A stretch of DNA of 64,000 bases from Fimbriosthenelais zetlandica (GCA_977030845.1 OZ365116.1:16864001-16928000); one strand, 5' to 3'; numbered from the stretch's first letter, positions 6,596 to 18,500 are shown. Notes: generated by a model not told the origin, from the sequence alone. Numbers and translations are program-made.

Positions 6596-9500
6596 TCACT
6601 TCCTCCTGTGTTTTCGGTAGCGATGTCGGGAGTAGATGGAAGGGTGGATTTTGTGCGCGGTTTCGCGAGGTAGACTGGTGAGAGGCACAATCTGCTGGCG
6701 ATACTCTTCAACTTGACTCTCCAAAACCCACGAGTCAGGCAAACTAAAAGAGAGAGATATAAAACAAATTTATACAATTGTATCATTTTGTTTTGAGTGC
6801 TCCCTTCGATTGGTGTTTGAAGATGTCATTTCTAGCAATTATTTAACAGGCTGTCGGGAGTATTTATCATGATTATGGATCATGAATGAAGTTCATGAAT
6901 TAACAAGCTCAGAAGTGAGTTAATGTATTCACAGTGACGTGGGTGGTAATACTTACATATCTTTGGGCGTCCACCGTAACAAAACCTTAACCTTCCCCGA
7001 ACATTCGATTTTACGAGCTATCACCTGCAACAAAGAATAAACTCTTTTAAAACGGTTATAATAAAAATAGTTTTAAACCTTATTAAATCTTATCTAAAAC
7101 TATCTGCCTATTTATGATTTATAGGTGGAGTTTCAAGGACATGAAGGCTCTACAAGAAGTCACCAATAACCTGCCTGTCTGTGGTGTAAGATAGATGTGT
7201 GTTAGAACCATGTAGATCAATGAATCATGTCATATTGTTTCCTCTGTTAGATGAGAGTCAGTAGCCAATGATCTAATGCTTCAATCCACGTCCACATGAG
7301 GCAGATCCGGACTCCCGGCTAATGCCATTACATGCTGGACAAACACCCACAATGATAAAATAGCCTCACATACAAGACAAATCAATACAATGTCAACGCT
7401 GCCTTTCTTTGCCCTCATTGCCTCTTGGCAACAACTTGGGGAGTCAATAGTACTCCCCAGCTGCCCCTACTTCACCATTCATGTTGACAAAGTCTGCCCG
7501 GGCCTGACTTAATTAGCTTCCACAATTAAGCAACCACTACACACAAATAGAATGTTTATTAACCCTTCCCTTTTCTCCATTTTTCTCTGAAAGTTTGCTC
7601 ATGAAGATTCAAAACAGGAAGGGGAACTACAATGAACATCTCCATGGCTTTGAATAAAAGATAAAAAGATAAAAGAAGGCATGGGAAGATAGTTGAGGAG
7701 GTATGGAAATCCATATCATCAAGGGAAACTGGCATCCATGCCTTAAGTGCTCCTTCTTCCTATAATATAACCAGTGAAGCTGAGACGTGAATCCTTCAGG
7801 AGGAGAGCCAGGCACGGCTCCACGAGAGGCGGGCTTCATCCAGGCGCGTAACTAGGGGCAACAAGAGTTGAGGCGGAACCAGCGGCATCAATAATTTGAT
7901 GCCATCGTCACCACCGCGTGCCGCATGAAGAGAAGGCCGGGGGTCCAACTAATCCACTACTACTACCACCTCAGCCAGGGGAGAGGGTAGTGGAGGGGCT
8001 GGCTCACTGTGGATGTGCACTGACTGTGATGGAGAAAATACTTCACCTTCCATACAGGCAGAGTGGAGAGCCATAGGCCTTAATACACCATATAGCTCTT
8101 AATATAGACTACAGCTGTGATTCAAACCAGAAGATACAGATATAGCTCAGACTCATATAGGCAGTTCTGGATACATTGCCAATGTGAACCATTATAGAAA
8201 AAGGGGCTGATACTGATACTGTATATGCAACTTGGAATAACAACATAACAGCACACTCATCTTGTTCAAGGACGGCTTGAATTATTCCCAGGTAAACTAA
8301 GACTCAGCAAGTGACATGCAAGGTTGATTGTGTGAAGCTGGCCTAGGGTAAGTGGAGCTGCCTCTAAAATGGAAACTAAATCCACCACCCTGGCTTTTAA
8401 CACGCAATATCCAACCAATATTCCCTCTCTATACCATACCACTCCATGGTCTACACCAGTTACAATTGTATCTGTTACAAAGGCCCCTTCAGGCCGCAAA
8501 AGGATCAAAGAAGGATAGTTTATTGGTATAGGGAAGAGGAGTAACCATGTCTAGGTTACCTGACGAGGTTCAGACTTTAATAGACTGTCTGGGTGAGACT
8601 CGCACTCTCAGTGACTGGCTCATCTACGGAGATGAGGGGAAGGTGACCCTGGTGCTCCAGTGGGAGGCGGAAGCTGGCAGTGGGAAGGAGAGGAAGTCTA
8701 ATACCACCCCTCAACTCCTCCAGGGAGTAGGTGGGAAACACCTGGAGGGGGAGGGGGGAGGGGAGGAGGGGAAGACAGCATGTGGAGGTTTACAAAACAA
8801 AGCAGCAGCAGCCTTGGTCAGATGTAAAGGCTTGCAGGCAGGTCAGAATCAAGAGGGGAATATAGTGAGACAGAACAATATGACTGGTACTATTACAGGC
8901 ACCACTTCAACATGCACCACCTCGACCACCACCACCACCACCACCCCTAGAATCAATAACTCCATCCTCGCCCACCTTCAGAGAGGCTGCCAATTCTTAT
9001 GTGATGTAGGCATGGCCGATTTTCGGACTAATTCTGATGAGAGTTATTCAGCCTTTGTGTCAAGCAGGCAGCATAACAGAGACAGTGAGCATCTGAGGTC
9101 ACCAGCTGAGCAGCTCACAGATGAGGAAGGTATGACCTCAGGAGCTGAGTCTGTCTACACGGATTGTTCCCCATCTCCCACTCTCTCCCAGTCCTCGGCT
9201 CACAGACCTCAACTGTTGCTCCTTGACAAAGACAAGCGTACCGGTGATCATCTAAATCCTTCACAGACATCTCCTTCTACTTCTAAACCCAGAAAACGTC
9301 AGAGAAGGCATAATAAAGCTCAGATCGATAAACAGACCAGTATCAGCATGCCCAGCCTGCTCACCAGTGGCCTTGATTCAAACTCAAGTGATAACAACAG
9401 CGACCAGGTTAAGAAAGGTAAAACCAAATGGACAGGTACTGTGGTGGCTTTATTGAAGAGGAAAATGTCTCGGTCAAAAGCGTCCGACTCTTCTGGTTCA

Positions 9501-12500
9501 ACGACAGTGCAGAAAACACCCCCTGCTGCAAAAAACGATCCTTGGGTGCAACGATGGAGCACAGCTAGTCGGAGTAGGTCCCCGAAGAGAAAAAGTGTCC
9601 CTAACGTTCAAATATCATCAGATAGTGAAGTTCAACGACCTTTAAGTGAGAAGGACAGGGAGTTGGTGGGAGGTGTGAGTCCCCATACAATGGCCGGGGT
9701 ACCGACTGTGCCTTCATCACCTCGCGTTAAACCATTCATGGATACGAGGAGTGAGCTGGAGGTAAAACGGTCAAGACCTAAGGAGGATTTCCACAGAGGG
9801 AGCATGTCAGTCGGCTCACCGGATGCTGACGGCATGATCACAGTGGTGGCTGATGTACATCGCCAATTCTCCCTGGAGCAGAATAAAGCACTGAGGTCCA
9901 GGACTCCTACCAGAGACAGCAGTCTGACGAGTGGAGGGGGAGGTGGGGGCAGTGGATCCATTGAGAGAGTTTTATCCATAAAAGCTGAACAAGATAAGGA
10001 GACAAGTAACACAGATGGCACTGACTTGATGGGAGGTGATAATGACAGGTCAAAGGCACCTGGTACAGACAGTATTAAGAGCAACTCCGAGCCCCTCAAC
10101 AAAAACCAAGAGCAAGTCAAACCAGAGGCTGGTCCATCACCATCAGGAGCATTATCAACAAAAGGGGTCAACAAGTCCTGTCCTGGCTCAAATGGTTCAC
10201 AGAGATATCTGACCACAGAGACTAATGGAGTGAAGGCAGAAAGCACTGAATCTCTCACGTCCAACAATGACAGAGATAAGAGCAGTGATTCAGCCATAGC
10301 CTACCCCTCACCTACTGATTTATTCGCGGCACAAGAGGATAGTTTAAGTCTGTCTGATATAACAGTGTCTTCAGAAGTGACTACTGGCCCTCCTGTAGAC
10401 TTATTATGTAGGAGCTCGACCTCTGAAGATATTGACCATATGGACAGTGCCAGTAACCACCTCCAGGCTGTCGATGGAGGAGGGGGAGGTGGCGGATCTT
10501 CCTCCAGTGGAAATAACCCTTCCACATCAGAACTGAGTGAGATCAGACATCTCTTAATGGGCGTGATCAAAGACTACCAAACAGAGACGTGGGTGAAGCA
10601 ACACAACACCAACTCCTCTACCAGGCAAGATGTGGTTAAAAGACAGGAGAAAAACGGACCAGAAGCAGGCACTCAAGGTGCTGACGATACAAGTGGTATG
10701 GAATGTACAACTCCAGGGTTAAAGCCTAATAGTGACTGCCAGCCCAGAAATGAGTTTGTCAATAACGTGCATAAAAACACAGAAGGCAATGTTGGTCTGG
10801 ATATTAAAACCAAAGCGCCTAAAACTAACAAGGAAAAAGGGCCTGAAAGATTAATAGTACCCAAAAATACGAGCATTACAGCAAATCCCAAGTTGAAATC
10901 ATCTCCCAACAAGGAGAAGGCACAGGGGAGTAATAACAACTCCATCTTATCTGATAAGACTTCAAAGCCAAGCAGTGCAGGCCCCACCTTGGAGGTTTTA
11001 GACAAGTTTACCTGCTCCCGTGGACGTATGAACGAGCTACGCCCAAAACTGAAACGGTTCTGGGAGGAGAAGCTGGGGGAAAGGGTGAGAATGTTAACGG
11101 TGTTAGACGCGAAGAGGGCAAATCCTAAAGCCAAGCCGAGACTGTTAGTAGCTGAGATAACGGACTTTAATGTGGTCACTCAGGATGATCCCGTTAACAA
11201 GGATAACAGCACGGCTCACTGCGTGGTCAAGGTACATTTCATGGGTCAGGATCATTGTTATGATCGCTGGCTTCGTCCCTCTGAATTAGCCAAAGCAGCT
11301 TTTTCCCAAAGAACCTTTTAAAAGGCTTGTTGACTCCCACCATTCAGCTCCATCGACCCGTGTGTGCTTATTGATTATTTCATTTCCTCGTGCTGCATCG
11401 ATTGTGTTTTGTCTAGAAATATTGATTATATCCCCACCACAGAGCCGCTACATATATAACCATTTCTGATCAACACAGTTTTTAAAGTGTCTGCTTTCAA
11501 AGTAGGAAACTATCAAAATATAGAGCGGGAGGGGATGAATGCAGTCTATTGTAAGCAGCTTTATTTATATTGCCCCGACATAACAGGTCCCCGCATACAT
11601 CCACATGCGATTCCTGGAGGAAATGAAGACTGATGAATTATGCATAGTGAACTGGTGCTAGTGGCTTATTAGGCTGCAAACTGATATCAAATTTCACAAA
11701 CGAGCCACCTTCCTTTCCTCCTTTGCGTTTTTATATGTGAAGAAAGCTTTAATTATATAGAATAATAAATGTAAAATTCTGGATGGAAGGAACTAGTGCC
11801 ATAAATCGTCTAAGACCAGTCATTGTCGAGGGACTAATCCCTGGAATAAAAGCCACGTAACAAAGGCCTGGTCGCTTCAATGTGATAAAAGCAAGGCTTC
11901 CTTCTTCAGATCAATGTCTGGCGAGGCAGATTTACCAGCCTTTCCTATCCCTTAATACATTCCATCACGAGAGCTACCGTGTCACCATTTTATGTCATTA
12001 ATTCCCCATCTCTGTCCCGGAAAACCAATGTCAGTTCTCTTGTTATTGCGGAGTAAGGAAGCAATGAATAAAACAGGACATCTATATCAACTCAAACTTA
12101 ATCATTAAAATATTCTGTTGCAGCGCACGTATATCAGGTGCAATTAATTATTTCTGTAGCCATTCAATTTTCATCCTCATATGATATCCCTACTAAGAGC
12201 ACCTTTAAGGAAGATTTTATCTTCCTTTTCAAAATTGTAATCAAAATTATGGAGTTGTCGGACTTCAGATGAAACACAATAAACCTCAAAGTGTCAATTA
12301 TGGAATGAAAAGATTGCTGGGATTTTTAAGAGCTCTGTTGACGCCAACAGTCATGGACATCCACCTATCTAATTCACGATCCTAAACAGAGGATCCCAAT
12401 AGGACGGCATCGATGGCAAGTAATTGGTAATGCAAGACTTTGGAGTGTCATCAGAATGCGTTGAGAAAGCTACTTATTATCGCAGTCAGCTTCAAAATTA

Positions 12501-15500
12501 TCCATGAACAGGAATAGTGTGAGCAAATAAATAATTCCTTGACCAATTTCCACGTTTCTTAGAATAATAAAAAAGAAATCTGACTAAATATTGTCATGAT
12601 AAAGTCTATATCAAATAAATAATAAAGATTAAGGAGAATAAACTTACAGAACTGTGGAATGTGATGTTGGGCAGCGCACCTGGGGAGGCGTCATGCTTGG
12701 TTTTCTCACTGAAAACGACAAGCTGATGTCGTAGCGTCTCCATTATCCGAGAATCAAAAAAGTCTTCTGTTTTCACTAAAAGGGAAAAAACACGGAAGTG
12801 AGTTGAAGAAAAACGTTTTAACAAGGAAGATAAGTAAAGACAGATGGTGACCCGGCTTAAAGACATCAGACAACAGATAAAAATATAGTTATTTTGGTAA
12901 AAACCAGAACCCTTTGAAATATTTTAAAACACCTCTATATTCCAGAATAATATGATTACTTTCCACACCATATTGAAAGATTTATTTAAAGAATCGTTTA
13001 GTATGACGTATATATATTATGTACAATAATTCGTTTCCAACAATAAAAGTACCAGTAAATAAAGGTCCCTTGAGTAAATAGCACATCATATATTGTGGCA
13101 AGAAAAGGCGTTAGGAAAATGAAAGAAATCTGAAGATTTAAACAAAATGTCGTTGTGAATATTCTACAATTCCCAGATGGGAATTATTTACTTCAATAAA
13201 GGCGATAAATTTCAAGAAACTAATCTACAAAGATTTTATGGTGGAAAAAACGAATCCAAGAAAAAATCCACAAAGAAACTTGACAGGCTATAAACTGGAT
13301 GACATAATTGCGTATATCTGGTTTAAAATCGATAGTGACAAGTAACATCGATGGTATGATGATAGGCATTGAGGGAGCAGAGACGTGACTGCCTCCTGGT
13401 GCTGCACCTACTGCACCAGGCACCAGAATGACACGGGCTGCACTCAACAGGCCTGAATAGGAAGAGGAGAAGGGTACAAGCGATAGGATGAAAGAGAATG
13501 AGAGTAAAAGAGCGAGGGAGAGAAAAAAAGAAGTAGAAAAAAAAGAGGTGGAAGGGGAGATGGAGACGGAGTTAGGTAGATTTAGTCATGAAGTACAGAT
13601 CTATACAGAGAGGAATATAGATAAAATGAAAGTGATGGGATGAAGGTAATGTGGGATGTGAGTATTGCATGTGTGGACGTTGCATGTGTTACATGTGTGT
13701 AGGAGTGAGTAACAGGGTGAAGGACCAGGTAAAAGCACCAGACAGACACAGATGATTGTTTTAGGTTGTGCCTGAGGACGAAGGTCGGTGGGAGGGAGGG
13801 AGGCGGGGGTATAAAGAGAGAGGTATGGCTGGTTGCCACTATCATACTGTTCTACCGTTCTGGTGATGTATGACCGGACCAGCCTCCAACCAAAGTCACC
13901 AGCACCGCTAGGCTAATTGAATACCTCGTCAATGTAACAAAGCCCTGCGGCACAATACCATTCATTTTATAGCCGTCATCAAGTCTTATCTCAAAAAGAA
14001 CATGGACATCTTTATCCTAATAACAGGAATCCACACGGCCTATGGCCCGCCAACCCGGGGCCAGAATAAGGTTATACTGGGCCACTGAACCCTTTAAGCA
14101 ACTGGGCCAGTTGATCTTCAACGCTATTTTCCCTGTATAGCCTACTAGTTTAGCCCAGTGATTTTAAAATTAGGGCTGGCCAGTGATTATTATCACAACT
14201 GGCCCGACATAGACAGTTAAAAACTTCGTTTGGAGCCATGACTAATATCGTTTTTCAGTATTTTTAGATAAGGAACAATGGGAAGGTATATGATTTTTTT
14301 CTTTTGATTCATTTCGTTATGTTTTACTGGATGTTATTTGATGTAATATTACTATAGAGCTATATCTATAGTCCAGGAGGGAGGTGAAGAATGCTGGAAG
14401 GAGAGACTGGGGAGGACTTAACATACAATCGCTGTGTATGCTTAATGGAATGTATGCTACCAGCTAGCATCAGTTCCAGGTGTCACCTTCAACACTCCAC
14501 CTACAAGCTCTACATGCACTGATTCTTACTGCATATTAAAGAATTTCCAATTATCTCATTGATTTTTTAAACATCATTCCCTTGTATTACTGGTAGTCTA
14601 CTTACTACCAGAACAGTATTTATCATTTAAATCATCTACATTTCTTGTTCTCGATTATTCCACCGAATATTCTTATTATCCTTTAACTAAAACATCAAAT
14701 ATATCTGGAAAAATGTGTCTAACGTCCAACAGAAAATCGCTGATATCTATTCACATTGTTTAAATTATTAGCACCTTTGTCTCCGAAGCACTTCAGTGGA
14801 TATATCTGGTAATACAGAAAGTCTTGATAGATTTCTTTACGGAAAAGTGAATAGTCCATGCATGGATGCACTTGGGTGCTTCTGCACCTGACGACTCGGC
14901 GTGACAAGGACAAATTACCTAAAAACTACCTCTCATACACCCAATAAACTGGTGACTCCCCACCTGGTCATTTGCCAGCTGACAATTATAAATCCCGAGA
15001 TAATGAAGATAATAAAAGATAAGGCATATATTGTGTGATTAGTTCCCTTCTTAAAATAGTTCTATCTAGTGATGATTTAAATAACGTCATTGTGTTTAAT
15101 AACAGTAATTAGTTGTCATATATGATGCAAATGAGAAATGTGCGTGAAGGTATTGGTGAGAGGATTATTGGCAGATGAAGCAGGATTTAACACCGCTTTG
15201 TGGTTTAGTGCAGTCAATGTAACATCTGTTACCCCACTGGCAATGGAACAATAACCATAAATACGTCATAACGCTTTGTGGTGATTTACCGTGCATTATA
15301 TTGTCTCAGACCTGATAGGAATACTAGACAGCAATGTGGGCCAAACTGCCATGAAAATAGCAAAATCATAACAGAAAAAAAAAGATTATATTCTGGGTGC
15401 AAAGTGCTATGATTTCTTCTGGATAAATATTAGGGAACCAACTTAAAGAAACAAAACCAAGAAAAACTTCAGTTTTCCCTAGATTTTCTACCAAGAGAGA

Positions 15501-18500
15501 GTCTCTATTTTCTTATCAAATTGCATTATTTGTATTTGGGTGGGTGGATGTTTGAATGTGTAGGCGTGCAGGGGGAGGTGGAGCGGGAGGGATAGAGTTA
15601 CATATCACAAGAAAATTCAGGCTAAGGACAACGCTGACCGCAGAAATACCAGACTGGTATCGCAGTGCAAGCGTGCAATATTTGAACAAGGCAAGCTGAG
15701 GCACGTAATACACATAGAGAAATGACCTTGATTTGACGCCCTTATCATAGGTGCCTGTCCTGATAGAAGATAACATGAGAGAATTAAGACACGTGACCTC
15801 AACAAGTACATAATGATACAGGCACGTGCTCACCATAAAGTGTCCATTACAAGAATAAAAGGTTAAACTGATGCCATTATTATAGTGTAATGCACCCATT
15901 AACTTCCTTTCTTTACATAAACGTTTCAATCCATCTTCTTGGTTTTGGAAAAATGTGACGCAGTAGGCCTATGAAAGGAAGATTCTTAATTATAACCATA
16001 GATATCATATCTTGCTATATGTCTATGTTATAACTGCTTCAAGTCTTAAAATCTGAAATAGGTTTTCAGCAATTTTAAAGCCTTTAAGACTGAATTTGTT
16101 CCTTTAAAATATTTCACATTTGCTCTTCCATTTTATAGAGAGAATACAAGTATTATACTCTACTTATAAACGTGTCTTTACGAGGAAGAGAAACACTGTG
16201 GATCGGGATCTTTATAAGGATTGTGCTCATGCATAAATATTAAATGGAGCTAAAGGGATTAACATCCTTTTTCTCATCCCATTTATTCATTTTGCACCAG
16301 TGTTGGCATTTATCACTGAGAGTACTTCCACACACCAAACTAAATCATGCAGGAATATGACATTTTCGGGGACTCTGGGACTTTCTCTTCCTGATATCAT
16401 GTTGAACACAAACTTCCCACTCTTCTAAACCACAATATTAGTCATCACATATATGAGAGTTAGAGCACAATGCATTCACACTTTGGTCGACCTCAAGAAT
16501 TCAAAATCAAAGAGTATAAAAAATTCCTGGTTTGCACACCTTCCACAGGGATCTACCATTTACCGTTAGTCAAACATGCTTCTTCTTTACTAGGGATGTA
16601 GGGCATATAATACTTTTTTTGCTTACTCATCAATTATATTTAAAAAAAGACTGAACCTACCTAGCCATGACTTTCTCCTACGTAATAGCTTCTTCTTCTT
16701 CAGCAACTTGGATGGGGTATCCTCCCTTGACTTGGATGAACATGACTTGACTGGGTGGCAGACATTGAAGTGACTATTGACATGACGTGCTAGTCCACCT
16801 TGAGTGGTGAAGCGTTGACCACAGCCGTGGACAATACACTGGAAGGGTTTATCTCCAGCGTGAGCCACAATATGACGCTCTATCCAGGACTGAGATGACG
16901 ATGGTCTGTTGTAAACTTTACAAGTTTTCCACAAGCACACATACTTGACGTCCTTGTCTTTATTATCACTGGTATTAGTGCCCGTCTTGATTTGTGGGTC
17001 AACATGTCGTGTACGGATATGATCCATGAGATCACCAGCAGGTAGACTCAGTCCACACTCACTCCAGTCACACCTGGCCGTGCTCACCTGCTCACCTGAG
17101 CCACTCGCTGCTTGAGACGAGCTGGAGGACGAGGAAGAAGAGGACGAGGACGAGGTACTCGTGGCTCGAGCAAAAATACCACTGGCACTGGTGCTAGCTT
17201 TACACAAGGCTGTCCTTGCCTTGCCAGTGGAGGGACCACTGTGTGGCACTTTACATATATTATTACTGCCATATTTAATGGTAGAAATACTCCATTCACA
17301 CTTGACCCTGTCACTCGTCACTGAGGTAGCTGTACTAATATTGGTTTTACTATTATCAATACTGAAGTTTGTGCCGTTGGTTATTAAGGGACAGCCGTCC
17401 TGGATCCCGGGCTCCGTCTTAATGTCAATGATCCTATCTGTTGGGGTGTTGGTACCTGATGAGTTTGAGGAGATACTGTAGGGCTGGTTACTATGAGATG
17501 AGCTGCTCAGAGGAGGTGTACATGAGCGGGAGGTGTCCGGGGAGATGGGACCTAGTAAGGTGGACTGTACAGTACTACATACATCCGTGTGCTGGTTACA
17601 TAAGGCACTGGCGGTCGGACAGTCCTCCACATGATTATCATGCTCATCTCCTGATTTACTGCAATACAAAAGAAGAGAAAATAAAGTAATTGGCGCTCAA
17701 CGGTTACAAGACATCTGGAAATAAAACACTATGAGAATGCTGAATACCAGTACGTGCTTGGATATAATATATGCATAAAAGATCACGCTACTAATAAGTT
17801 CTTTTAGGCATTTTAAATCTTGTAGAATTGAAAGGAAACAGTGGGACATTAATATAAAATCTTGGCAGTACAATTGCACCAGGGATCTTTGTCAGTTGTC
17901 CAATACACATCTCTCTCAGACTCAATACACAACTCAACACCCCAAACATTTATAGACTGATTTACAAAGCCGGTTGGAATATGATCACATTAAGAAGATT
18001 TTGATCCCTGATCAGAGATAGAATGATTTTTGAGGTTGAATAAAAGGTAACACATCCATCAACTGGAGATGGAGCAGACTGAGCTTTTATCTACTGGGAG
18101 ACCATGATGTTATTGTTCTGCCTCCGCTCGCAGCCCTGTGCCTGTGGAGAATGCAGCGAGTCCAGTTTCACCGTGCAATACTGAATACACAACCAAGCCA
18201 CAGACAAAAAAAGACACACACCTCTCTTCAACACTCTGTTTATCCTTCCTAGTGGATCTTCTCTTCTTAGGAGGCGACTCTAGACGACTCGATGACTTTT
18301 CTGTTCGCGTTCTATTGTTATTGTTCAAAGATCGCGATCGGAGAGTGGGTATGGATAGGGACAGGGTGGCTGGGATTCTGGTCGACACCCCATTTACTCG
18401 ACTGTCTTTAGATGTTTTACACCGTTTTACGTCCATAGGTCGGCATGGTTTTCCATTACAGCGACAACCTTGTATCATGCCATTTTTCTTGCATGTCCCG

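What the first reader, a model, noticed from the sequence alone, without database searches (positions are those of the whole stretch)
8547..11321. Large intronless gene with a chromo-barrel-like C-terminus nested antisense within the PRC2 subunit gene AEBP2
Seen: a 924-codon ORF fills about half of the 5.6-kb AEBP2 intron 3 (7025..12647) on the opposite strand, while neighbouring genes have short introns and many exons. The protein is largely low-complexity with NLS-like patches and ends in LVAEIT...VHFMGQDHCYDRWL. Established: Tudor-knot/chromo-barrel domains (MRG15, MSL3, KAT8 types) carry an HYxGWNxxWDEW motif and bind methyl-lysine or nucleic acid. Here H-F-x-G and Y-D-x-W are kept but the first Trp is Gln, so the aromatic cage looks altered. 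Inference: a lineage-specific nuclear reader-like protein physically coupled to a Polycomb gene, possibly regulated with it by transcriptional interference.
Basis: partly seen in the sequence, partly recalled or inferred. Interest (0 to 1): 0.75.

Follow-up and report, generated by a model that had tools for sequence, protein, structure and literature searches.

The report
Orphan chromatin-reader-like gene inside AEBP2
A real, conserved single-exon gene for a mostly disordered, probably nuclear protein sits backwards inside an intron of the Polycomb gene AEBP2; it ends in a chromo-barrel/MBT-type domain with an incomplete methyl-lysine pocket, the same nesting is kept in a distant relative, and its function and expression are untested.

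Summary
A 924-codon ORF (8547-11321, +) fills 49% of AEBP2 intron 3 (7025-12647, AEBP2 on the minus strand, GT/AG sites verified).

It is a genuine gene:
- It is single-copy in its genome.
- Three other species carry full-length, single-ORF homologs (939, 765 and 1044 aa) with the same start and end.
- Synonymous sites are saturated (pS 0.79), while non-synonymous change is 0.30 overall and 0.05-0.15 in six conserved blocks.

In the species of the 765-aa homolog, the gene lies antisense in the same AEBP2 intron (21 kb there). The nesting is therefore old.

The C-terminal about 60 residues match Tudor-knot/chromo-barrel/MBT domains. A profile search of 1.84 billion proteins hit tandem Tudor-knot proteins (E 6.5e-10). 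hhalign gave 95% probability with a score of 45, against at most 19 in 150 shuffles. Of the MBT-type cage F-W-Y, only F is invariant; W is Q or H, and Y is Y or H.

AlphaFold models were low-confidence (pLDDT 67), and fold searches were uninformative. No RNA runs were listed, so expression and any coupling with AEBP2 are untested.

No named relative and no Pfam family exists. This is a lineage-restricted (probably annelid) orphan family with a known kind of domain. Interest is moderate.

The parts
8547..11321 (+). Complete single-exon CDS, 924 aa plus stop
   Evidence: The ORF is single-copy in the genome. Homologs P0001, P0002 and P0003 share the same Met start and C-terminal end. Purifying selection is shown.
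8547..8666 (+). Conserved N-terminal block, aa 1-40 (M..LP.E...L...L......W..YG...VTLV..W)
   Evidence: Conserved in all four family members; pN 0.13 against pS 0.63. ESM features resemble the first part of BTB domains (0.91, low shared count); this is a lead only.
9285..9476 (+). Basic NLS-like patch (RKRQRR, aa 249-254), then the conserved motifs IDKQTSISMPSLLT and W.GTVVALLKRKMS, aa 247-310
   Evidence: pN 0.15-0.19.
9711..9872 (+). Conserved motifs VKPFMDTRSELEVKR and ITVVADVHRQFS, aa 389-442
   Evidence: The VHR[QT][FY]S core is also visible in P0003.
10335..10616 (+). Conserved acidic/Ser block (EDSLSLSD, DIDHMDSAS) and a predicted amphipathic helix ELSEIRxLLMGVIKDYQTExWV, aa 597-690
   Evidence: pN 0.17.
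10992..11318 (+). Conserved C-terminal domain, aa 816-924: a family-specific strand plus long helix, then a royal-family-type beta core
   Evidence: 83% identity to P0001, and 50% and 42% identity to P0002 and P0003 over the domain. pN is 0.05-0.11. AF2 secondary structure is E4-13, H14-32, E37-43, E54-69, E78-88, H100-108 at pLDDT 66.6.
11136..11309 (+). Tudor-knot/chromo-barrel/MBT-like core, aa 864-921 (LLVAEI ... VKVHFMGQDHCYDRWLRPSEL)
   Evidence: - hmmsearch hits to tandem Tudor-knot proteins: E 6.5e-10, 2.7e-4 and 6e-4.
- hhalign: 95% probability, E 3-4e-8, 25-49 columns; 150 column shuffles scored at most 19.3 against 45.0.
- Pfam MSL3_chromo-like below threshold, E 0.0035-0.023.
- PDB: MYST HAT 6if4_B at E 0.18, and L3MBTL3 at E about 2.
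7025..12647 (-). AEBP2 intron 3, the host of the nested gene
   Evidence: GT donor at 12647-12646 and AG acceptor at 7026-7025 on the minus strand.
12648..12775 (-). AEBP2 exon 3 (EDFFDSRIMETLRHQLVVFSE...ITFHSS)
   Evidence: 77% identical to the matching exon in L005.
6957..7024 (-). AEBP2 exon 4 (VIARKIECSGKVKVLLRWTPKD)
   Evidence: 81% identical to L003 2272-2192.
7832..7937 (.). Conserved non-coding element 610-715 nt upstream of the ATG; possibly this gene's promoter or 5' UTR
   Evidence: - 90.6% identity over 106 nt to L001 104-206, with about 78 nt differing at one base. This is more conserved than any part of the CDS.
- It lies at the same distance from the ATG in both species.
- It is unique in the genome.
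- There is no Rfam match, no folding signal and no splice sites around it.

Best explanation
This is a bona fide, single-exon protein-coding gene of a small, unnamed, lineage-restricted animal family (the genome is probably an annelid). It has stayed nested antisense in intron 3 of AEBP2 since before the split of at least two distant species.

Architecture of the product (shown):
- a short conserved N-terminal block;
- about 770 residues of Ser/Thr/Gly/Lys-rich disordered chain carrying a classical basic NLS-like patch and four or five short conserved motifs;
- a conserved C-terminal domain of about 110 residues, whose last about 60 residues belong to the Tudor 'royal family' (Tudor-knot/chromo-barrel/MBT type).

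The methyl-lysine cage is incomplete (shown):
- the Phe of 'HF' is invariant;
- the Trp after the Gly is Gln or His;
- the third cage position is Tyr or His.

Inferred function: a nuclear scaffold that docks on chromatin or nucleic acid through a MOF-like (cage-poor) barrel and recruits partners through its linear motifs. It is not inferred to be a canonical high-affinity methyl-lysine reader.

The nesting is a stable physical linkage. Nothing shows that it is a regulatory or functional link to PRC2.
For: - Gene reality: a 924-aa ORF, single copy. Homologs P0001, P0002 and P0003 have co-linear conserved blocks from Met1 to the C-terminus. P0002 is also one uninterrupted ORF in genomic DNA. pS is 0.79 (saturated) against pN 0.30 overall and 0.05-0.15 in the blocks.
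- Nesting: splice sites of AEBP2 exons 3 and 4 flank the ORF. In the P0002 species, AEBP2 exons 1, 2 and 3 lie at L005 230-673, 2129-3184 and 8378-8533. The ORF is antisense, and exon 4 is at L003 2272-2192. This is the same intron, about 21 kb there.
- Domain: a C-terminal profile searched against 1.84 billion representatives returned only the three family members plus tandem Tudor-knot/MORC2-chromo/MBT repeat proteins. hhalign to those repeats gave 95% probability and a score of 45, against at most 19.3 in 150 shuffles. The same repeats match solved L3MBTL3, MRG2, MRG15, MOF and EAF3 domains. ESM neighbours of the domain are Spin/Ssty, SAWADEE, MSL3-chromo/Tudor-knot and MBT.
- Cage: substitutions are visible in the family alignment. 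Mapping is to L3MBTL1 F379/W382/Y386, and to the MOF-like versus MSL3-like classes described in bioRxiv 10.1101/257485.
- Nuclear location: a basic RKRQRR patch.
Against: - AlphaFold2 gave only pLDDT 66.6 with two and with six sequences. It drew an open alpha/beta sheet, not a barrel.
- Foldseek-PDB, VIA-wide and the Atlas search returned no royal-family match.
- The confident profile alignment covers only 25 columns, or 49 with relaxed settings.
- No Pfam model reaches its threshold.
- No RNA run could be listed, so transcription is not shown.
- Nuclear location, chromatin binding and nucleic-acid binding are all inferred.
Confidence: 0.65

Rival explanations
1. The C-terminal barrel is a working methyl-lysine (or methyl-arginine) reader of MBT type. 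It would use a two-aromatic cage (Phe898 plus Tyr905), with Gln901 and acidic residues completing the pocket. The protein would then be a true histone-mark reader.
For: - The window protein matches L3MBTL3 repeat 3 in V-K-V-H-F-x-G-x-x-x-C-Y-D-x-W.
- Cages of 2-4 aromatic residues can suffice (10.1101/257485).
- F898 is invariant.
Against: - The Tyr is His in P0002 and P0003, and the Trp position is never aromatic in the family. A cage is therefore not a conserved family feature.
- No confident structure is available.
Confidence: 0.15
2. The resemblance to royal-family domains is a short convergent motif. The C-terminal domain would have another fold (for example the alpha/beta sheet drawn by AlphaFold) and serve as a protein-protein or dimerisation module unrelated to chromatin.
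For: - Both AF2 models show a sheet packed against helices.
- The best VIA matches are ferredoxin-like or MscS-type alpha/beta domains at Z of 6.7 or less.
- The confident hhalign region is only 25 columns.
Against: - The models are low-confidence, and the Z values lie in the tool's stated noise range.
- The profile score is about 17 sd above column shuffles.
- The G-x5-aromatic-D-x-W spacing and the upstream 'AE[IV]' strand align as in chromo barrels.
- Independent ESM features point to the same clan.
Confidence: 0.13
3. The gene is functionally tied to its host. Its product would be a lineage-specific PRC2 accessory or antagonist (in the manner of the intronless, disordered EZHIP or EPOP), or its transcription would modulate AEBP2 by interference. 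This link would explain why the nesting is kept.
For: - Nesting in the same AEBP2 intron is kept between species whose orthologs are only 28% identical.
- The product is a disordered, single-exon, chromatin-domain protein.
Against: - Nested genes are generally stable without any functional link.
- No PRC2-binding motif was identified.
- No expression data are available.
- No literature link was found.
Confidence: 0.06
4. The ORF is a dead or never-expressed relic (a chance ORF, pseudogene or transposon remnant).
For: No RNA evidence could be obtained.
Against: - The 924 open codons are kept open in three more species, with dN far below dS.
- The ORF is single-copy with no transposon domains.
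Confidence: 0.01

Closest known systems
Chromo-barrel / Tudor-knot domains of MRG15, MSL3, EAF3 and the MYST acetyltransferases MOF/TIP60 (Pfam PF11717, PF22732)
   Same: - The core motif and spacing are shared: hydrophobic-x-V-H-[FY]-x-G-x(4)-aromatic-D-x-W, followed by a short strand and a helix, with an upstream 'AE[IV]' strand.
- There is a sub-threshold Pfam MSL3_chromo-like match.
- The link is transitive, through tandem Tudor-knot proteins that match solved MRG15, MOF and EAF3.
- The incomplete cage resembles the MOF-like subgroup.
   Different: - The domain sits at the extreme C-terminus of a long disordered protein, not at the N-terminus of an MRG or HAT protein.
- There is no MRG or acetyltransferase domain.
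- The loops between strands 1-2 and 2-3 are long.
- A family-specific strand plus an approximately 20-residue helix precedes the core.
- No Pfam threshold is reached, and the fold is not confirmed by prediction.
MBT repeats (L3MBTL1/3, PF02820)
   Same: In the window protein, the stretch VKVHFMGQDHCYDRW is nearly identical in pattern to L3MBTL3 repeat 3, VKVHFDGWNNCYDYW. The Phe and Tyr correspond to cage residues F379 and Y386 of L3MBTL1. Like an MBT unit, the domain has an N-terminal extension before the barrel.
   Different: - There is a single unit rather than 2-4 interlocked repeats.
- The cage Trp is Gln or His.
- The Tyr is not conserved in the family.
- There is no Pfam MBT hit, and the PDB E-values are about 2.
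Intronless, disordered Polycomb-associated proteins (EZHIP, EPOP)
   Same: The product is a single-exon, largely disordered, fast-evolving protein with short conserved motifs, and it lies in a Polycomb context (here only a genomic one).
   Different: There is no sequence similarity and no evidence of PRC2 binding. Those proteins have no royal-family domain and are not nested in PRC2 genes. The comparison is by analogy only and rests on my own knowledge.

Membership tests
Chromo-barrel / Tudor-knot (royal family) | Significant sequence or profile similarity to family members | tested here: met
   - hmmsearch E 6.5e-10 to a seven-repeat Tudor-knot protein.
- hhalign 95% probability, E 4e-8; 150 shuffles scored at most 19.3 against 45.0.
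- The intermediary profile hits solved MRG15, MOF, EAF3 and L3MBTL.
- Direct Pfam and PDB matches are only sub-threshold.
Chromo-barrel / Tudor-knot (royal family) | Five-strand SH3-like beta-barrel followed by a helix | tested here: inconclusive
   The AF2 secondary structure (four or five strands, then a helix) is compatible, but pLDDT is 66.6 and the model is not a barrel. Foldseek, VIA and Atlas searches gave no royal-family match.
Chromo-barrel / Tudor-knot (royal family) | Aromatic cage of 2-4 residues for methyl-lysine (MSL3-like class) | tested here: not met
Only F898 is invariant. The Trp position is Q/Q/Q/H and the third position is Y/Y/H/H in the four members.
MBT repeat proteins | Two or more tandem MBT repeats that reach the Pfam MBT threshold | tested here: not met
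   There is a single C-terminal unit and no PF02820 hit, even at E of 10 or less. There is only local motif similarity to L3MBTL3.
Nested (intronic, antisense) gene pair with AEBP2 | ORF lies wholly inside a host intron with verified splice sites, on the opposite strand | tested here: met
   The arrangement is conserved in a second species.
Nested (intronic, antisense) gene pair with AEBP2 | Transcription of the nested gene, and its regulatory interaction with the host | not testable with these tools
   No sequencing runs were listed for this locus.
Transposon-derived ORF (e.g. chromovirus integrase chromodomain) | Multiple copies, or RT/integrase/transposase domains | tested here: not met
   Single copy in a 447-Mb genome and no Pfam domains.

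The most novel reading that the evidence does not exclude
The gene would encode a lineage-specific Polycomb-linked chromatin factor: a disordered scaffold whose cage-poor barrel binds nucleic acid or nucleosomes, and whose conserved motifs engage PRC2 or its antagonists. It would have been held inside AEBP2 intron 3 because the two genes are co-regulated (shared chromatin domain or transcriptional interference). The ultraconserved element at 7832-7937 would be the control switch.
Probability: 0.06. Interest if true: 0.75.

Novelty: new variant of a known kind. Interest (0 to 1): 0.38.

Why it matters
- It adds an unannotated, lineage-restricted protein family to the royal-family (Tudor/chromo/MBT) readers. 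The architecture is unusual: a long disordered chain with the barrel at the very C-terminus and a naturally degenerate cage.
- It documents a host-nested gene pair involving a PRC2 subunit that has been stable over deep divergence.
- It offers a clean case for asking whether long-kept nesting reflects function or mere inertia, and what cage-poor barrels bind.
- By itself it is not surprising to a chromatin specialist. Orphan disordered proteins with one reader-like domain, and stable nested genes, are both common.

Tried and rejected
- Pfam on the full protein gave nothing meaningful.
- phmmer against PDB gave only low-complexity noise plus a weak L3MBTL3 motif hit.
- Word-indexed homolog searches found only P0001. 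Low-complexity words filled the candidate list, and the 0.55-1.75x length window applies, so they say little about family size.
- Two AlphaFold2 runs of aa 812-924 (2 and 6 sequences) both gave pLDDT 66.6. Foldseek-PDB twice, VIA-wide and the Atlas shape search gave no usable match. I treat the fold test as inconclusive, not negative.
- The ESM Atlas search on the whole protein gave no usable hit.
- The N-terminal 45 aa resemble BTB starts at 0.91 with a low shared-feature count. I kept this as a lead only, because 40 residues cannot be a BTB domain.
- Rfam on the whole intron gave no match. RNA folding of the conserved non-coding element on either strand gave z of -0.7 to -1.2, which is not significant.
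- I rejected reading the conserved element as a cassette exon of AEBP2. One minus-strand frame is open, but neither species has an AG or GT at its borders, and conservation is at nucleotide level.
- The element was not found in L003, even with 3 mismatches.
- Both sequencing-run searches listed nothing.
- DNA for the P0003 species could not be fetched, so nesting there is unknown.
- Transposon or retrocopy origin was rejected: single copy, no TE domains, same position in two species.
- There are no tandem repeats in introns 2-3.
Full report
**1. Observation**

The ORF listing shows a 924-codon ATG-started ORF at 8547..11321 on the plus strand. The in-frame open stretch begins only five codons upstream. 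The region is richer in G+C (0.46-0.50) than its flanks (0.35-0.43).

AEBP2 lies on the minus strand:
- Its first coding exon starts MAADRGM around 18.1-18.6 kb.
- A large exon inside 16623-17669 carries the C2H2 fingers.
- A short exon reads EDFFDSRIMETLRH...ITFHSS.
- The next exon reads VIARKIECSGKVKVLLRWTPKD.

Reading the minus strand directly gives exon 3 = 12775..12648, followed by GTAAGT, and exon 4 starting at 7024, after TTGCAG.

The protein is Ser/Thr/Gly/Lys-rich, with low hydrophobic content except at both ends. It carries a basic RKRQRR patch at residues 249-254.

**2. Is it a gene?**

The ORF is single-copy in its 447-Mb assembly, and no Pfam family reaches significance.

A 939-aa homolog (P0001, 50-58% identity) was found by the indexed search. 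An exhaustive HMMER search with a C-terminal profile over 1.84 billion representative proteins added P0002 (765 aa, E 2.5e-26) and P0003 (1044 aa, E 7e-19). None carries a name in any source.

All four share the same Met start and the same C-terminal end. They also share six co-linear conserved blocks separated by divergent, indel-rich low-complexity sequence. P0002 is also one uninterrupted ORF in genomic DNA.

A Nei-Gojobori count against the P0001 coding sequence gives pS 0.79 (saturated) and pN 0.30 overall. Within the conserved blocks pN is 0.05-0.15. The ORF is therefore under purifying selection and is a real protein-coding gene.

**3. Nesting is conserved**

In the contig that carries P0002, tblastn with the window's AEBP2 exon translations finds:
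- exon 4 (VIARRTECSGKVKVLLRWTPKD) and exon 5, on the opposite strand, 7.7 kb upstream of the ORF;
- after walking 10 kb further along the contig, AEBP2 exon 1, the zinc-finger exon and exon 3 (EDFFDSRVMETLRH...VTFHSS) on the other side.

In record coordinates, the homologous intron 3 is about 21 kb there, and it contains the P0002 ORF in antisense.

The two orthologs are only 28% identical overall. The arrangement therefore predates a deep split. DNA for the P0003 species could not be fetched, and the P0001 contig is too short (4.6 kb) to tell.

**4. The C-terminal domain**

The family alignment of the last about 115 residues shows these invariant positions: D819, K820, C823, W839, E840, K842, G844, L853, D854, K863, L866, E870, D873, V876, Q879, D886, C892, V894, K895, F898, G900, D906, R907, W908, R910, P911, S912, A917 and A918.

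Besides the family itself, the exhaustive profile search returned three proteins made of 5-7 tandem repeats (E 6.5e-10, 2.7e-4 and 6e-4). Pfam calls these repeats Tudor-knot, MORC2 chromo-like, MSL3 chromo-like and MBT, with E down to 1e-38.

An alignment of 16 such repeats compared with the family profile by hhalign gives:
- 94.9% probability, E 4e-8, over 25 columns;
- 49 columns with relaxed settings, which brings in the 'LLVAEI' strand opposite 'WYAAEIV';
- in controls, 150 column-shuffled versions of the family alignment scored 10.4 +/- 2.0 (max 19.3) against 45.0, and the reversed alignment scored 8.1.

The repeat profile itself hits solved L3MBTL3 (6e-11), plant MRG2, MRG701, MRG15, MOF/KAT8 and EAF3 domains.

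Direct matches of the family are weaker but point the same way:
- Pfam MSL3_chromo-like at E 0.0035-0.023;
- a MYST acetyltransferase chromo domain, 6if4_B, at E 0.18;
- L3MBTL3 repeat 3 at E about 2, with a striking local match VKVHF.G...CYD.W.

The nearest ESM-feature clusters are Spin/Ssty, SAWADEE, MSL3-chromo/Tudor-knot, PTM Tudor and MBT/PHF20L1, at 0.78-0.87; these are leads only.

I conclude that the last about 60 residues are a royal-family barrel-type module. Whether it is nearer to chromo-barrel or to MBT is unresolved.

**5. Fold test**

Two AlphaFold2 runs, with two and with six sequences, both gave mean pLDDT 66.6. The secondary structure is a strand and a long helix, three or four further strands, then a C-terminal helix. 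This is compatible with 'extension + barrel + helix'. The chromo-barrel layout is described in 10.1101/257485. The model, however, is an open sheet.

Foldseek against PDB, VIA-align against 48,161 chains (best Z 6.7, within the tool's stated noise) and the Atlas shape search (TM below 0.5) found no royal-family fold. With so shallow an alignment, this neither confirms nor refutes the fold.

**6. The cage**

Mapping is on the MBT cage F379/W382/Y386 of L3MBTL1, which is equivalent to the H-Y-x-G-W-x(3)-W-D-E-W pattern of MRG15 (from my own knowledge):
- The family keeps the first aromatic residue (F898, invariant).
- It replaces the Trp after Gly by Gln (three members) or His (one member).
- It has Tyr (two members) or His (two members) at the third position.
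- The residue opposite the strand-2 Tyr is aliphatic in most members.
- The structural Trp of D-x-W is invariant.

This is the 'MOF-like' incomplete-cage class. That class is thought to bind nucleic acid rather than methyl-lysine, and includes domains with no measurable histone-peptide binding.

**7. Most likely mechanism**

Shown:
- conserved gene;
- disordered body with short conserved motifs;
- NLS-like basic patch;
- royal-family-type C-terminus with a degenerate cage;
- conserved nesting.

Inferred:
- nuclear location;
- the barrel contacts nucleic acid, nucleosomes or a protein partner;
- the linear motifs (IDKQTSISMPSLLT; W..TVVALLKRK; VKPFMDTRSELEVKR; VHRQFS; DIDHMDSAS; the helix ELSEIRxLLMGVIKDYQTExWV) recruit partners.

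A functional link to PRC2, or transcriptional interference with AEBP2, is possible but unsupported. No runs could be listed for the locus, and the literature search found nothing on a gene nested in AEBP2.

**8. Taxon and novelty**

Earlier notes of this scan call the genome a probable annelid (s1-207641), with lophotrochozoan-type neighbours (s1-207636). I could not test this.

The exhaustive search returned only three unnamed relatives, all from raw assemblies. The family is therefore absent from annotated proteomes at detectable similarity. It is a new, lineage-restricted family built around a known kind of domain.

**9. Side observation**

A non-coding block at 7832-7937, 610-715 nt upstream of the ATG, is 90.6% identical over 106 nt to the P0001 contig, and about 78 nt differ at one base. 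It lies at the same distance from the start codon there. It is better conserved than any part of the coding sequence, although synonymous sites are saturated.

Its other properties:
- It is unique in the genome.
- It has no Rfam match and no significant RNA fold.
- It has no flanking splice sites.
- It is not detectable in the more distant L003.
- It contains an 8-bp inverted repeat (GGCATCAA/TTGATGCC).
- It contains a GTTGCC...AGTTAC arrangement that resembles an RFX X-box (from memory, untested).

It is most simply this gene's core promoter or 5' UTR.

Noticed in passing
window 7832-7937: This is an ultraconserved non-coding element upstream of the nested gene. It is 90.6% identical over 106 nt (about 78 nt with one change) to the P0001 contig, although synonymous sites are saturated. 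It is unique in the genome and has no Rfam or RNA-fold signal. It contains an 8-bp inverted repeat and an RFX X-box-like GTTGCC..AGTTAC. It is probably the promoter or 5' UTR of the nested gene, or an intronic AEBP2 regulator.
   Followed up: partly
window 8520-8546 and L001 770-792: In both species a T-rich tract ending in AG lies just upstream of the ATG (17 nt upstream in the window, directly adjacent in L001). This hints that the gene may have a 5'-UTR intron, so it would be intronless only in its CDS.
   Followed up: no
window 9632-10297 (-) and 10673-11179 (-): Long antisense ORFs of 221 and 168 aa lie inside the gene. They are Leu/Ser/Pro-rich shadow ORFs of the sense frame, not genes.
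   Followed up: no
P0004, P0006, P0008 (proteins): These are unnamed proteins built of 5-7 tandem Tudor-knot/MORC2-chromo-like units joined by Lys/Ala-rich linkers. In them the residue after the cage Gly varies freely (Y/H/Q/W). They form an unusual all-reader repeat architecture of unknown origin.
   Followed up: partly
locus of P0003 (no DNA), 14994-17267 minus strand: A 757-aa ORF lies 1.9 kb downstream of the P0003 gene on the opposite strand. It could be the AEBP2 zinc-finger exon of that species, which would extend the nesting to a third lineage, but the sequence could not be fetched.
   Followed up: no
window 12776-16625: AEBP2 intron 2 is also long (about 3.9 kb). It has a strongly G-over-C skewed stretch at 13.0-14.5 kb (GC skew up to +0.27) and no tandem repeats. 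Its content was not examined.
   Followed up: no
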